Source: Geosiphon pyriformis uo1
Lineage: Eukaryota > Fungi > Glomeromycota
Assembly (NCBI GenBank): GCA_016748015.1
Contig: JAAOMT010000334.1
Coordinates: 12,976 to 76,975 of the forward strand
DNA: 64,000 nt
Direction of reading: 5' to 3'
The position numbers and the translations under genes are program-made. Below are positions 57,303-62,436 of the stretch, piece after piece. Below the pieces are notes generated by a model. The model was not told where the DNA came from. It did not search any database and was given only the letters and a program-made list of their open reading frames with translations. Every line of letters starts with the position of its first letter. Position 1 is the first letter of the stretch.

Positions 57303-58523
57303 GTCACTTGAATTTTTTATCATGATCGTAACATCTATAATGTAAAAGTAGGAATAGATAATGCACATAATACTCATAAATTTGACACAATTTACCGTCC
57401 CGAATTGTATTCACCAAATCATCCTACAACTACAACATGCTTGTTGAAAATGACATATGACATTAATGATTGTAAAGTGGTTCTCTTGTGACTTTTTCTT
57501 TTGACAATCATCAATTTGAAATAATCAATTTATATGAAAAATTTTTTTACTTTGATAAATTTTCATTTAAAGCTAACTAATAACATAAATTGCGAGAAAA
57601 GAAACTTTTGATTTACCAGTCTTTTTGAATTATCATAATTGAAAAATATGTAAATCTTTTCTTTGTAAATATTCATTAGTAATACATTCTATATTTATTT
57701 TTTAAATGAAAAGAAAAGAAGGGCATAAATTGGATTTTTAAACTTTGAAAACCTTTTGGACAATATAAAAATCTTTTTTTTTGAAGGTTGTACAATCTGA
57801 AACTCCAAAATTCTTGAATGATATTGTTCCCAATTTTTTGTTTAAATAACAAAGATTTATAAAATTTTTAAAATATTGAAATAATGACTTGTTATTATAT
57901 ATATCTTATTTACTCCTTGCATAAAATTTTTTTCCTATAACAATAAAATATCAAAACTCAAAGACTGAGAAAAATGTGAGCTGAGGATGGCGTAAAAATA
58001 TTCCAATAATATTCATCAAGTGAGCCTCATTTACTAGAATTGATAATGCGCCATGATTGAGCAACCTTTTTAATAAATTAATATAGGATCTATCATTATA
58101 TCAAAGAAATATCGAAGAAATTCATTTTCTGTACTATTGGATTTAATAAATATGAGGAGCGATCAAGAGGTCATCACGCGGACTAAATTTATTCTTTTTT
58201 CATGAGTTAAACATCATGAAAGTAAGCTAGCGGATTAATTACTCATTTGAATGTCATCATTTCAAATTTTAATTTGTAAAATTTTTTAAACTAATAGCTT
58301 AATGCGAAAACTTTATTTTGTTCCACATTCTAAAATCTTCAATGACAATTTCTTCTAATGGCAATTAACTGTTTGTTATGATTGATTCATTACTTGATAC
58401 TTTGCATTTTTTTTTTCAGAAATCTCAACTATAAAATACCTCTCACTATCCCAAATTTTGTCATCTTTGCCTTCCTCAGCTACAAATAGACATCCTAAAA
58501 AAATCAAATTATTATTCAATAAT

Positions 58524-58772
58524 ATGTCTCAAAAAAGTCATTTCTTAAGTTCTAACCAAGGAGCGTACACTCCTTCAACAAGTAATGTATTAATTCGAAA
58601 TGCTACAGAAATTCGTCAAATCACTCCTCCTCCTCCTCCTCCTCCTCCTCCTCCTAATCAACCAACTAATAGGCAACATACAATTCTCGAAGGACAAAAC
58701 CTTAATTTCAATAGAAAAGAGGAATTAATAGAACCAACATTTCACTTTTCATATATGCCACAAACTTCCTAA
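58524..58772 (+). CDS. Small uncharacterised protein with poly-Pro tract (82 aa)
   Basis: ATG at 58524; MSQKSHFLSSNQGAYTPSTSNVLIR...PPPPPPPPPNQP...EPTFHFSYM; protein-level similarity to 51103-51373. Confidence 0.55.
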   Translation: MSQKSHFLSSNQGAYTPSTSNVLIRNATEIRQITPPPPPPPPPPNQPTNRQHTILEGQNLNFNRKEELIEPTFHFSYMPQTS

Positions 58773-60046: not shown

Positions 60047-60601
60047 TTACAATTCCTCCTTTTTTTCCTCCGATTTCACATTCTCTTCCTTTGCATCCCG
60101 TTCCTTTTTCAATTTTTGTAAATGAGGACACTTAATTTCGTCACTATCTTCCTTGTCAGATTTATTTAAATAAGGACATTTGGAAACATCCCCACCATGA
60201 GCTTTTTGATACTCCTTCAAATAATCCTCACTGAACTTTCCTTCTTTCCCATCCTTACTACTCTGGAAATGTGGACACTTTTCAATATAAGGACATCCAC
60301 TACCAGCAGTAACACCATCTACACCTGCCAACTCTAATTTCCCATCATTTGCTTCTGCTCGTTTTTTTAATTCTTCAAAGTAAGGGCATTTCCCATTTGC
60401 CATAGGACATTTGGTGGTGGACCAATCTACCGGATCAGGTGTTTCACCAGCTTGGATTTTTGCAATGTACGGACATTTTTTGGCGTGTGGGCAACCCTTA
60501 TCAGTTGTTTGTTTATCTGGTGTTGCTAACGTGAAAGATGACAACGCAAGAAGTGTGATAATTATAATGAATAAACAAAAAAAATTTCGCTTTTGTTTCA
60601 T
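60047..60601 (-). CDS. Signal-peptide protein with eight Cys-Pro motifs and C-terminal KEEL (putative ER-lumen heme/metal-binding protein), 184 aa
   Basis: ATG at 60601; MKQKRNFFCLFIIIITLLALSSFTLA signal peptide; CPH/CPY/CPM x8; ends ...EEKKEEL*. Confidence 0.8.
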   Translation of the reverse strand: MKQKRNFFCLFIIIITLLALSSFTLATPDKQTTDKGCPHAKKCPYIAKIQAGETPDPVDWSTTKCPMANGKCPYFEELKKRAEANDGKLELAGVDGVTAGSGCPYIEKCPHFQSSKDGKEGKFSEDYLKEYQKAHGGDVSKCPYLNKSDKEDSDEIKCPHLQKLKKERDAKEENVKSEEKKEEL

Positions 60602-61125: not shown

Positions 61126-62436
61126 CTATTTATCAACAATAATAAAATCGTCTTCGCTTTCTAAATTGTTTATTATTTTATTATCTTGTTTGATCACATA
61201 CTCTGTATTTTTTTCGCTATCTTGGATAGGTTCTTCGTCTTGATCTTCAATCATAGTATCTGGAGATTGTGGTTCTAGTGATTTCTCGCTAATTGCGCTT
61301 TGTGCGCTTTGTTCTGATAGTTCAGTATTTTCATTGTTGGTCGAGAATAAATTTTCAATTTTAGTGCTTTCTTCCGCCATTTCGATATTTTCTTCATTGA
61401 CTGATAATGAAGTTTCGGCCTCCATTTGAGTATCTAGTGTCATTTCTTGCTCAGCTATCTCGACATCTGGTTCGATCGAATTGAGAATAGTATACGGTTG
61501 AATAATTGCCTCCTCAAGTTTTTCTGATGTCGCCGTGGTCAGAGTGGTCGTCTTTATAGCTTCAGAATCGATTTTTAATTGAGCCTGCATAGCTTCAGAT
61601 ATTTGATCTTCTTGCTCATCTTGAACATTGAGTTTCTTCCATTGCGAATCTTTAATTAAATCTAAATCACTCAACATTTTCTGAGCAGTTCTCACAATTT
61701 GTTTTCGTCGTTCTCGTATGACTTCAACGTTATTGCTATCAATACGATCCAACTCGTCAAAGATCTTCAATACGGATTCTTCTTGAGTGAGAAAAGTGCG
61801 ATTATCTGGTGTAGAAGGAAATATTTGTTTTTCGTGTTCAGTGTGAAAAGTCAGCACAACTTCTGAATTAAACTGTTTTTGTAACGCATTCAAATGCCGC
61901 TCGATTAAACCAAGTTGATGAAGCTTATGTAAAGTACGACGTGTTTTTTGATTTGCATTTCGGTGACGAAGAAATCCTACAATCCGTTCAGCTGCTTCTT
62001 GACGAGAGATGTTGCTTTTACCACTCTGGATCGGAATTTTTCGGGTTTTGCTAAAATTACTACCTTCGCCGCTTTTTGATTGGGAAGCATTCTGACGTAA
62101 CTTTCCTCCGCAAAAATTAGTTGCATCACGTTCACGTTCTTGATCCAATACCCATTGACGAAAGGCCTGCTGCTGAAGAAAATTTTCTTGCTCAGCTTGA
62201 ATACGACGTCGACGTTCTTGTTGGGCTGATTCGATAGCTCGTCGTCGTTCCAAGTTTTGAAGTTCAGAGATTACATCATGAGCTCTATTTCGCGAGTAAT
62301 ACCCTTCATGATAACGAGGATTTGGGAAACAGCGATTTGCCTGGGCGTAATGACAGCCTCTTGTTGGTTGAGAATAACGTGAATTCGAGGGAGTAAAGAA
62401 AATGTATTCGGAATCGGGTGGGAAATATGCGAACAT
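61126..62436 (-). CDS. BAG-domain Hsp70 co-chaperone with upstream IQ-like motif, 436 aa
   Basis: QEAAERIVGFLR (IQ-like); NRTFLTQEESVLKIFDELDRIDSNNVEVIRERRKQIVRTAQKMLSDLD (BAG helices 2-3); acidic disordered tail. Confidence 0.85.
   Translation of the reverse strand: MFAYFPPDSEYIFFTPSNSRYSQPTRGCHYAQANRCFPNPRYHEGYYSRNRAHDVISELQNLERRRAIESAQQERRRRIQAEQENFLQQQAFRQWVLDQERERDATNFCGGKLRQNASQSKSGEGSNFSKTRKIPIQSGKSNISRQEAAERIVGFLRHRNANQKTRRTLHKLHQLGLIERHLNALQKQFNSEVVLTFHTEHEKQIFPSTPDNRTFLTQEESVLKIFDELDRIDSNNVEVIRERRKQIVRTAQKMLSDLDLIKDSQWKKLNVQDEQEDQISEAMQAQLKIDSEAIKTTTLTTATSEKLEEAIIQPYTILNSIEPDVEIAEQEMTLDTQMEAETSLSVNEENIEMAEESTKIENLFSTNNENTELSEQSAQSAISEKSLEPQSPDTMIEDQDEEPIQDSEKNTEYVIKQDNKIINNLESEDDFIIVDK

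What the first reader, a model, noticed from the sequence alone, without database searches (positions are those of the whole stretch)
60047..60601. ER-retained protein built from eight Cys-Pro (heme-regulatory-motif-like) units
Seen: signal peptide; every Cys in the mature chain is in [GK]CP[HYM]; three closely spaced pairs (GCPHAKKCPY, KCPMANGKCPY, GCPYIEKCPH) plus two single motifs; charged low-complexity linkers; C-terminal KEEL. Established: CP dipeptides followed by a hydrophobic/aromatic residue bind heme in HO-2, ALAS, Hap1 and holocytochrome c synthase; KEEL is a functional KDEL variant. Inference: an ER-lumen heme buffer/chaperone or redox-metal sensor. How heme reaches secretory-pathway hemoproteins is poorly understood, and I know no named family with this architecture.
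Basis: partly seen in the sequence, partly recalled or inferred. Interest (0 to 1): 0.8.

Follow-up and report, generated by a model that had tools for sequence, protein, structure and literature searches.

The report
ER-resident Cys-Pro repeat protein, zinc-transporter kin
This is a real gene for a small protein kept inside the endoplasmic reticulum, one of an unnamed family of early-diverging fungi that is related to the lumen-facing end of the ER zinc transporter Yke4/ZIP7, so it more likely handles zinc or another metal than heme, though neither was tested.

Summary
Window 60047-60601 (minus strand) is a single-exon, 184-aa gene with a signal peptide, eight [GK]-C-P-[HYM] motifs holding every mature Cys, and a KEEL end. 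The genome is Geosiphon pyriformis.

It belongs to an unnamed family with no Pfam or PDB match, and every named member is "hypothetical". I collected about 110 members from Chytridiomycota, Glomeromycotina outside Glomeraceae, and Basidiobolus. In them, 91% of Cys outside the first 25 residues are Cys-Pro. Sixty-four end in x-[DESTN]-EL, mostly HDEL, KDEL or RDEL. In this genome BiP ends HDEL and PDI ends HEEL.

New here is a link to the ER zinc transporter Yke4/ZIP7:
- In Saitoella and one unnamed organism, the whole repeat array forms the transporter's lumenal N-terminus, within one uninterrupted ORF.
- Geosiphon's own Yke4 N-terminus is homologous to the C-terminal half of this protein (hhalign 90-94%; above all 2000 CP-preserving shuffles).

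His-rich linkers in relatives, and odd Cys counts in 29 of 41 complete members, argue for free thiol ligands rather than structural disulfides.

Best reading (about 0.45): a lumenal zinc or other metal buffer, or hand-off partner of Yke4. Heme binding (about 0.2) is not excluded. Nothing biochemical was tested.

The parts
60047..60601 (-). Complete single-exon coding sequence, 184 codons plus a TAA stop
   Evidence: ORF list and translation. It aligns over its full length with the 182-aa and 177-aa Ambispora orthologues.
60524..60601 (-). Signal peptide, residues 1-26: basic N-region, hydrophobic core, TLA|TP site
   Evidence: Hydropathy profile. 59 of 111 family members, many of them fragments, have an N-terminus of this kind.
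60467..60496 (-). Twin Cys-Pro unit 1, residues 36-45 (GCPHAKKCPY)
   Evidence: C37, P38, C43 are conserved in at least 90% of 39 aligned members.
60380..60412 (-). Twin Cys-Pro unit 2, residues 64-74 (KCPMANGKCPY), preceded by the conserved D-W
   Evidence: C65, P66, K71, C72 are invariant in 39 members. This is the most conserved part of the family.
60269..60298 (-). Twin Cys-Pro unit 3, residues 102-111 (GCPYIEKCPH)
   Evidence: C103, P104, P110 are invariant and C109 nearly so.
60170..60181 (-). Single Cys-Pro unit, residues 141-144 (KCPY)
   Evidence: Conserved in Glomeromycotina orthologues.
60122..60133 (-). Last Cys-Pro unit, residues 157-160 (KCPH), which opens the long C-terminal K/E-rich helix
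   Evidence: C158 and P159 are conserved in at least 90% of members. The AF2 helix 159-182 begins at the Pro. This unit aligns with the juxtamembrane CPYIQELN motif of Yke4/ZIP7.
60092..60400 (-). Residues 68-170: the half that is homologous to the lumenal N-terminal ectodomain of Yke4/ZIP7
   Evidence: hhalign gives 94.2% (E 1.1e-7), or 90.3% (E 1.5e-6) without the fused proteins. The family HMM scores 26.5 bits on the own-ZIP N-terminus, against a maximum of 19.8 in 2000 CP-preserving shuffles.
60050..60061 (-). C-terminal KEEL, an ER-retrieval (KDEL-receptor) signal variant
   Evidence: 64 family members end in x-[DESTN]-EL, and the Ambispora and Acaulospora orthologues end in REEL. In the same genome BiP ends HDEL and PDI ends HEEL.

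Best explanation
The gene encodes a soluble protein that is translocated into the ER through its signal peptide and kept there by KDEL-receptor retrieval through its KEEL end. It is a member of an undescribed family of early-diverging fungi. The family is built from short helices, each opened by a Cys-Pro, usually in twins of consensus G-C-P-L-x-x-K-C-P-Y-Y. The module is the same one that forms the lumenal N-terminal ectodomain of the ER zinc transporter Yke4/ZIP7. In Saitoella and one other organism the whole array is fused to the transporter. In Geosiphon the transporter keeps three such motifs, and the soluble protein looks like a free-standing, expanded ectodomain in which KEEL stands where the first membrane helix would be. 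Inferred mechanism: the helix-capping Cys thiolates, helped by neighbouring His or Tyr, bind Zn2+ (possibly another soft metal). The protein would then buffer lumenal zinc or pass it to or from Yke4, shielding the ER thiol-oxidation machinery from free zinc. Shown here: gene structure, motif conservation, the ER-targeting signals, the fusions and the homology to Yke4's ectodomain. Inferred only: metal binding, which metal, and any interaction with Yke4.
For: The gene and motifs are real. The profile search found 66 relatives in 1.84 billion representatives, and a second search found 77. In 111 members, 91% of Cys outside the first 25 residues are CP. 64 end in x-[DESTN]-EL and 41 have both a signal-peptide-like start and that end. 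P0041 (Saitoella, 572 aa) and P0016 (709 aa) combine signal peptide, CP repeats and a Pfam ZIP domain, each in one uninterrupted ORF. The Geosiphon ZIP orthologue is named YKE4, zinc transporter 7 or KE4 in relatives and carries the HEIPHEIGD signature. Its lumenal N-terminus holds CAHLKEL, GCPHF and CPYIQELN. Homology of that N-terminus to this family is supported by hmmsearch (26.5 and 28.8 bits against maxima of 19.8 and 21.1 in 2000 CP-preserving shuffles) and by hhalign (90-94%). A juxtamembrane CP motif is conserved in Yke4 of Glomeromycotina and Pezizomycotina. In Mortierellomycotina it sits in a His-rich stretch. The family is His-rich at 5.7%, with up to 19 His in chytrid members of about 200 aa, and His recurs six residues after the second Cys of a twin. 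29 of 41 complete members have an odd number of mature Cys, so not all Cys can be in internal disulfides. Yke4 is an ER zinc transporter (PMC7711662). Excess lumenal Zn2+ blocks Ero1-PDI (PMC13287676), which gives a lumenal buffer a rationale.
Against: No metal binding was tested or can be computed here. The Geosiphon protein has only 4 His. The near-absolute Pro after every Cys is not a usual requirement of zinc sites, and it is the hallmark of heme-regulatory motifs. The ER lumen is oxidising, so twin Cys may be disulfide-bonded. Domain fusion shows shared compartment and context, not shared ligand. In animal LIV-1 transporters the comparable CPALLY cysteines are thought to form disulfides (PMC9861476). 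The AF2 model is of low confidence (pLDDT 64.8, pTM 0.31) and shows no defined site. Expression of this particular gene was not shown.
Confidence: 0.45

Rival explanations
1. ER-lumenal heme binder, buffer or chaperone. Each Cys-Pro followed by a hydrophobic or aromatic residue would act as a heme-regulatory motif, ligating ferric heme through the thiolate, with nearby His or Tyr as second ligand.
For: CP followed by L, Y, H, V or F is exactly the HRM core. There are weak Pfam matches to the ALAS presequence, which carries HRMs (E 0.42 for this protein, 0.0061 for P0041). AF2 suggests a largely flexible chain, as HRMs usually are. An odd Cys count leaves free thiols. No ER-lumenal heme carrier is known.
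Against: There is no reason for 9-15 heme motifs to form the ectodomain of a zinc transporter. Known HRM proteins act in reducing compartments, and the HO-2 HRM pair oxidises at -200 mV (PMC2742820). The Pfam matches are far below threshold. Nothing else in the family points to heme.
Confidence: 0.2
2. The protein is a thiol-redox or protein-protein regulator and carries no ligand. The Cys at each helix start would have a low pKa, as in the CPYC site of glutaredoxin or the CPHC site of DsbA. The protein could act as a lumenal thiol-disulfide buffer or sensor. It could also act as a soluble mimic of the Yke4 ectodomain, docking on or forming mixed disulfides with the transporter to gate it.
For: In the AF2 model, helices begin at the Pro of CP at residues 44, 73, 104 and 159. 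CPY and CPH are the first three residues of the Grx and DsbA active sites (my own knowledge, not tested). The protein is homologous to the Yke4 ectodomain. Most Yke4 orthologues have a single lumenal CP Cys, which cannot form an internal ectodomain disulfide. The CPALLY motif of LIV-1 transporters has been proposed to gate the pore through a cysteine (PMC9861476).
Against: There is no second Cys at +3 and no thioredoxin fold. The His-rich linkers of relatives are not explained. This reading is entirely inferential.
Confidence: 0.2
3. The protein is a purely structural, disulfide-knotted ER protein, and the Cys-Pro pattern only serves folding.
For: The ER lumen is oxidising. The Geosiphon protein has an even number (8) of mature Cys, arranged in pairs.
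Against: 29 of 41 complete family members have an odd number of mature Cys, typically 11 or 9. AF2 finds no compact fold even with 39 sequences. Repeat number varies from 6 to 44.
Confidence: 0.07

Closest known systems
Lumenal N-terminal ectodomain of fungal Yke4 / animal ZIP7 (SLC39A7, KE4 group of LIV-1 ZIP transporters)
   Same: Same compartment, the ER lumen behind a signal peptide. The same Cys-Pro-helix motif is present (CP[YH][ILF]xxL[KN]xxK). Homology is measurable. In Saitoella and in P0016 the full repeat array is that ectodomain.
   Different: This protein has no ZIP membrane domain and ends in KEEL instead. It has eight motifs against one to three in most Yke4 orthologues. Human ZIP7 is described as His-rich and lacking the CPALLY motif (PMC9861476).
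CPALLY / PAL motif of plasma-membrane LIV-1 ZIPs (ZIP4, 5, 6, 8, 10, 14)
   Same: A Cys-Pro followed by hydrophobic residues and Q or N (CPALLYQ, CPAIINQ, CPAVLQQ) lies just before TM1 on the non-cytosolic side (PMC9861476). The fungal Yke4 motifs CPYIQELN, CPLVESLN and CPVVQQLN sit in the same place.
   Different: The resemblance rests on motif and position only. I had no referenced LIV-1 ectodomain sequence to align, and the PDB sequence search with the family profile found nothing. The CPALLY cysteines are thought to be disulfide-bonded.
Prion protein as a freed ZIP ectodomain
   Same: This is a precedent for the ectodomain of a LIV-1 ZIP becoming a separate protein without the transporter (PMC9861476, PMC3203146).
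   Different: It is a different ectodomain fold, lineage and anchoring (GPI at the cell surface, against soluble with KDEL-type retrieval). The direction of the event in fungi is not resolved here.
Heme-regulatory motifs (HO-2, ALAS, Hap1, Bach1, IRP2, heme lyase)
   Same: A Cys-Pro dipeptide followed by a hydrophobic or aromatic residue, several copies per protein, in flexible regions. HO-2 pairs act as a thiol/disulfide switch (PMC2742820).
   Different: Those proteins are cytosolic, nuclear or mitochondrial. There is no sequence homology beyond the dipeptide. None is a lumenal repeat protein or part of a metal transporter.
CCCH zinc fingers
   Same: UniRef labels the Batrachochytrium member a 'C3H1-type domain-containing protein', and one CCCH protein is a weak profile hit (P0051, E 1e-5). 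The recurrent C-x5-C-x5-H spacing in twins resembles zinc-knuckle spacing.
   Different: No family member matched the Pfam zf-CCCH models. The spacing differs from C-x8-C-x5-C-x3-H, and the compartment differs.

Membership tests
Soluble ER residents retrieved by the KDEL/HDEL receptor | Cleavable N-terminal signal peptide and no other membrane segment | tested here: met
   Hydropathy shows one hydrophobic core at residues 6-21 and none elsewhere. No dedicated signal-peptide predictor was available.
Soluble ER residents retrieved by the KDEL/HDEL receptor | C-terminal tetrapeptide of the type [KRHQSA]-[DENQ]-E-L (PROSITE ER_TARGET pattern, from my own knowledge) | tested here: met
   The protein ends in KEEL. 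Family ends include HDEL 17, KDEL 13, RDEL 10, REEL 4 and HEEL 4. In the same genome BiP ends HDEL and PDI ends HEEL.
Soluble ER residents retrieved by the KDEL/HDEL receptor | Actual ER localisation that depends on the tetrapeptide | not testable with these tools
   This needs a tagged protein with and without KEEL.
Heme-regulatory-motif proteins | Cys-Pro dipeptide followed by a hydrophobic residue | tested here: met
   All 8 mature Cys are CP followed by H, Y or M. In the family, the residue after CP is Y 36%, L 30%, H 14%.
Heme-regulatory-motif proteins | Reversible heme binding through the Cys thiolate | not testable with these tools
   This needs a hemin titration.
Heme-regulatory-motif proteins | Located in a compartment where the Cys stays reduced (cytosol, nucleus, mitochondria) | tested here: not met
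   The signal peptide and KEEL place the protein in the ER lumen. HO-2 HRMs oxidise at -200 mV (PMC2742820).
ZIP (SLC39) transporters, KE4/Yke4/ZIP7 group | ZIP membrane domain (Pfam PF02535) with the HEXPHEXGD signature | tested here: not met
   There is no Pfam ZIP match and no membrane segment. The protein is not a transporter.
ZIP (SLC39) transporters, KE4/Yke4/ZIP7 group | Homology to the lumenal N-terminal ectodomain | tested here: met
   Fused forms P0041 and P0016 have E 4.6e-8 and 4.8e-22 to the family profile. The own and Ambispora Yke4 N-termini score above all shuffles. hhalign gives 90-94%.
CCCH zinc fingers | Match to the C-x8-C-x5-C-x3-H models | tested here: not met
   Pfam scans of this protein and ten relatives gave no zf-CCCH hit.
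Metallothioneins | Very high Cys content with C-x-C or C-C clusters | tested here: not met
   Cys makes up 5% of the mature chain. There is no CxC or CC, and the Cys are 5-38 residues apart.
Thioredoxin-fold CxxC oxidoreductases (Grx CPYC, DsbA CPHC) | Second Cys three residues after the first, within a thioredoxin fold | tested here: not met
   No CPxC occurs anywhere in the protein. There is no thioredoxin Pfam match and no fold match.

The most novel reading that the evidence does not exclude
Early-diverging fungi have a dedicated soluble metal (zinc) buffer or chaperone in the ER lumen. It would have arisen from the ectodomain of the ER zinc transporter Yke4/ZIP7 (or given rise to it), a fungal parallel to the origin of the prion protein from a ZIP ectodomain. 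It would use a helix-capping Cys-Pro unit as a ligand motif not described before. The same unit, as the single juxtamembrane CP motif of most fungal Yke4 proteins, would be the receiving site on the transporter.
Probability: 0.3. Interest if true: 0.8.

Novelty: new variant of a known kind. Interest (0 to 1): 0.62.

Why it matters
How metals and heme are held and moved inside the ER lumen is poorly known. ZIP7/Yke4 loss raises lumenal zinc and poisons oxidative folding (PMC13287676), yet no dedicated lumenal zinc-binding partner of the transporter is described. This family offers a concrete, small, soluble candidate that can be expressed and titrated. It also points to an overlooked Cys-Pro motif in the lumenal N-terminus of fungal Yke4, resembling the CPALLY motif that human ZIP7 and ZIP13 are said to lack. 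It further gives a test case for whether Cys-Pro 'heme-regulatory' motifs can serve other ligands. The family is present in Batrachochytrium and in most arbuscular-mycorrhizal lineages, so the question is not confined to one odd fungus.

Tried and rejected
- **Pfam:** scans of this protein and of relatives gave only sub-threshold noise (oligo_HPY, Preseq_ALAS).
- **ESM Atlas:** the feature search gave no usable hit.
- **PDB sequence searches:** searches with the protein, with the 39-sequence profile, and with the Geosiphon ZIP all found nothing.
- **AlphaFold2:** 3 sequences gave pLDDT 52 and 39 sequences gave pLDDT 64.8 with pTM 0.31. The model shows short helices after each CP and no compact fold. 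Foldseek against the PDB found nothing. I did not run the other structure libraries on so weak a model.
- **Expression:** the one run found holds a single 211-nt contig identical to 60213-60422 and is probably DNA, so expression is neither shown nor excluded.
- **Literature:** there were no papers for the locus tags of five homologues. None combined heme-regulatory motif, ER and KDEL.
- **Weak profile hits:** P0047-P0052 are ankyrin, LRR, kinase, CCCH and HSP20 proteins, and I discarded them as motif-level noise. P0013 (Ulp1 protease + repeats), and, from their precomputed Pfam domains alone, P0099 and P0108, look like merged gene models.
- **Rejected readings:** metallothionein, CCCH finger, thioredoxin-like oxidoreductase and MANF-like protein. 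MANF was rejected from memory only; it resembles this protein merely in size, eight Cys and a KDEL-like end.

Full report
**1. The observation**

The feature is a minus-strand ORF at window 60047-60601, 184 codons plus a TAA stop.

- **N-terminus.** It has a basic start, a hydrophobic core (residues 6-21, Kyte-Doolittle up to 2.95) and a small-residue site near residue 26. No other hydrophobic segment exists.
- **Cysteines.** They sit at 9 (in the signal peptide), 37, 43, 65, 72, 103, 109, 142 and 158. Each of the eight mature ones is preceded by G or K and followed by Pro, then H, Y or M.
- **C-terminus.** The chain ends in KEEL.
- **Chance.** The probability that all eight Cys are followed by Pro is about 3e-11, and only 154 of 200,000 shuffles reached even four CP.
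- **Gene model.** The gene is a single exon. The Ambispora orthologues (182 and 177 aa) align from the first Met to the last residue.
- **Copy number.** The assembly holds a second copy on another contig, but the two loci are identical over all 3552 nt compared. They count as one gene.
- **Organism.** It is Geosiphon pyriformis, because an ORF of the same assembly is 100% identical to a named Geosiphon protein. The AT-rich composition (about 28% GC) fits.

**2. It is a family, and its defining features are conserved**

A word-based search found only two relatives. A profile search of 1.84 billion representatives then found 66 at E<=1e-3, 31 of them at E<=1e-10. A second search with a 19-sequence profile listed 77.

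- **Taxa.** Named members come from many orders of Chytridiomycota, including Batrachochytrium, Spizellomyces, Chytriomyces, Rhizoclosmatium and Rhizophlyctis. They also come from Glomeromycotina (Ambispora, Paraglomus, Acaulospora, Entrophospora, Diversispora, Gigaspora, Dentiscutata, Racocetra) and Basidiobolus. No Rhizophagus, Funneliformis or Glomus member appeared.
- **Annotation.** All are annotated as hypothetical or uncharacterised. None has a Pfam domain for the repeat, and the family profile matches no PDB sequence.
- **Cys-Pro content.** Across 111 members, 1150 of 1268 Cys outside the first 25 residues (91%) are followed by Pro.
- **ER signals.** 64 members end in x-[DESTN]-EL: HDEL 17, KDEL 13, RDEL 10, REEL 4, HEEL 4, KEEL 1 and others. 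41 have both a signal-peptide-like start and such an end. Most of the rest are fragments or run off contigs.
- **Repeat number.** It ranges from about 6 to 44.
- **Basic unit.** It is a twin, G-C-P-L-[AK]-x-K-C-P-Y-Y-x-x-[H or hydrophobic]-K, plus single units of the type K-C-P-[YH]-L-K-K.
- **KEEL in this species.** Within Geosiphon, the BiP orthologue ends in HDEL and the PDI orthologue ends in HEEL. An x-E-E-L end is therefore used by a bona fide ER resident of the same species.

**3. The link to the ER zinc transporter**

Two profile hits are fusions. P0041 (Saitoella complicata, also in S. coloradoensis; 572 aa) and P0016 (an unnamed organism from a public run; 709 aa) each have a signal peptide, then 9 or 15 CP motifs, then a full Pfam ZIP domain (E 1e-55 to 1e-60). 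The CP region includes the family's D-W...CPLA-x-CP signature. In both cases the gene is one uninterrupted ORF of exactly the protein's length (L003:3001-4719 and L004:3001-5130). The fusion is therefore not a gene-model artefact.

The ZIP part carries the HNFTDGLA and HE-x-PHE-x-GD signatures. Its Geosiphon orthologue (L005:1099-2562, 487 aa, single ORF) has relatives named 'Zn(2+) transporter YKE4', 'zinc transporter 7' and 'histidine-rich membrane protein KE4'. Yke4 is the ER zinc transporter of yeast (PMC7711662, citing Kumanovics et al. 2006). ZIP7 exports zinc from the ER lumen (PMC13287676).

The Geosiphon Yke4 has its own signal peptide and a lumenal N-terminus. That N-terminus contains CAHLKELIKEG, GCPHFSQSLKK and, about 25 residues before the first membrane helix, CPYIQELNRQK. 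These resemble the units of the soluble protein (CPYFEELKKR, CPHFQSS, CPHLQKLKKE).

The similarity is more than motif-spotting:

- **HMM scores.** The family HMM scores 26.5 bits on the Geosiphon Yke4 N-terminus and 28.8 bits on the Ambispora one.
- **Shuffle controls.** The maxima were 11.8 and 17.3 in 2000 plain shuffles, and 19.8 and 21.1 in 2000 shuffles that keep every CP intact.
- **Profile-profile comparison.** It gives 94.2% probability (E 1.1e-7), or 90.3% (E 1.5e-6) when the fused proteins are left out of the ZIP-side alignment.

The aligned part is residues 68-170 of the soluble protein. Its last CP unit lands on the juxtamembrane CP motif of the transporter. KEEL therefore sits roughly where the first membrane helix would follow.

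Looking across 120 Yke4 orthologues:

- **Glomeromycotina and Pezizomycotina.** The juxtamembrane motif is conserved (CPY[IV]..L, and CPLVESLNEHK or CPVVQQLN).
- **Orbiliomycetes.** The Pro is replaced (CEVVQELN).
- **Mortierellomycotina.** The motif lies in a His-rich stretch (CPFH with 7-17 His).
- **Mucoromycotina.** The N-terminal extension is absent altogether.

In form and position the motif resembles the CPALLY motif of plasma-membrane LIV-1 transporters (CPALLYQ, CPAIINQ, CPAVLQQ). A review states that human ZIP7 and ZIP13 lack that motif (PMC9861476). I could not test this resemblance by alignment.

**4. What it most likely does**

The evidence shows a soluble ER-lumen protein that shares its building block, and measurable homology, with the lumen-facing end of an ER zinc transporter. 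From there on I am inferring.

Points in favour of metal binding:

- The fusion and homology place the module where animal ZIP7 carries its His-rich, presumably metal-binding N-terminus.
- The family is His-rich (5.7% overall; 9-19 His in chytrid members of about 200 aa). His recurs six residues after the second Cys of a twin, giving C-x5-C-x5-H.
- 29 of 41 complete members have an odd number of mature Cys, so free thiols must exist.
- In the AF2 model each helix begins at the Pro of a CP (residues 44, 73, 104, 159). A Cys in that position caps the helix. From general protein chemistry this is expected to lower its pKa and favour a thiolate.
- Micromolar lumenal zinc inhibits Ero1-PDI, and steady-state labile ER zinc is about a million-fold lower (PMC13287676). 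A lumenal buffer therefore has a plausible job.

My best reading is a lumenal Zn2+ (or other soft-metal) buffer, or a donor and acceptor for Yke4, at about 0.45.

**5. Rivals**

- **Heme, about 0.2.** CP followed by a hydrophobic or aromatic residue is the core of heme-regulatory motifs, the chain is flexible, and no ER heme carrier is known. But the only sequence support is two sub-threshold matches to the ALAS presequence. Known HRMs work in reducing compartments, and HO-2's pair has a midpoint of -200 mV (PMC2742820). Heme motifs as the ectodomain of a zinc transporter would also need a special explanation.
- **Redox or protein-protein regulator, about 0.2.** CPY and CPH are the first residues of the glutaredoxin and DsbA active sites, although no second Cys or thioredoxin fold is present. 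A free ectodomain copy could dock on, or form mixed disulfides with, Yke4, as has been speculated for CPALLY and the pore (PMC9861476).
- **Purely structural disulfide protein, about 0.07.** The odd Cys counts and the lack of any predicted compact fold argue against it.

All of these can be separated by simple biochemistry; see the next steps.

**6. Comparison with what is known**

The protein works like, and is related to, the lumenal ectodomain of Yke4/ZIP7, but it is not a ZIP transporter because it has no membrane domain. It carries the formal signature of heme-regulatory motifs but fails the compartment criterion, and heme binding is untested. It meets every sequence criterion of a KDEL-receptor cargo. 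It is not a CCCH finger, a metallothionein or a thioredoxin-like enzyme. The origin of the prion protein from a LIV-1 ZIP ectodomain (PMC9861476, PMC3203146) is a useful precedent for a ZIP ectodomain living on as a separate protein. Which form came first in fungi is open.

**7. Novelty and verdict**

The family is undescribed as far as Pfam, the PDB, source annotations and the searchable literature show. Its tie to Yke4/ZIP7 and the conserved CP motif in fungal Yke4 N-termini appear in none of the searches run here. I rate it a new variant of a known kind, a ZIP-ectodomain-derived ER resident, rather than categorically new, because no function has been shown. Interest is 0.62. It is a clean, conserved, easily testable candidate for an open question, lumenal metal or heme handling, but the mechanism is inferred.

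**8. Limits**

- No signal-peptide predictor was available.
- No eukaryotic genome collection beyond this assembly was available.
- No usable RNA data were available.

Noticed in passing
window 61126-62436 (-): The neighbouring 436-aa ORF carries a BAG domain (Pfam PF02179, E 2.2e-7, residues 183-260), which marks an Hsp70 co-chaperone. Its tail is long, acidic and of low complexity.
   Followed up: no
G000 contigs C430 and C496 (L001, L002): The locus is present twice in the assembly, in opposite orientation and 100% identical over all 3552 nt compared. This is probably redundant contigs rather than a true duplication.
   Followed up: partly
L005:1099-2562 (Geosiphon Yke4/ZIP7) and P0122-P0240: Fungal Yke4/ZIP7 orthologues carry a conserved Cys-Pro motif about 25 residues before TM1 (CPYIQELN, CPLVESLN, CPVVQQLN; CEVVQELN in Orbiliomycetes). 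It resembles the CPALLY motif that a review says human ZIP7 and ZIP13 lack. Mucoromycotina orthologues have no N-terminal extension at all, and Mortierellomycotina have a His-rich one with CPFH.
   Followed up: partly
L006 and L017 (own genome): The Geosiphon BiP orthologue ends in HDEL, whereas the PDI orthologue ends in HEEL. This fungus therefore uses more than one retrieval tetrapeptide.
   Followed up: partly
one search hit list: No member of the soluble Cys-Pro family was found from Rhizophagus, Funneliformis or Glomus, although many of their proteins are in the database and their Yke4 orthologues were found. This may be a loss in Glomeraceae.
   Followed up: no
P0004, P0007, P0009 (chytrids): Some chytrids have giant versions (487-668 aa, 29-44 CP motifs) made of three or more tandem copies of the whole ~160-aa module. 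They still have a signal peptide and an HDEL or TDEL end.
   Followed up: no
window 58458-58772 (+): A mechanical ORF contains a run of 11 prolines. I did not examine it, and it may not be a gene.
   Followed up: no
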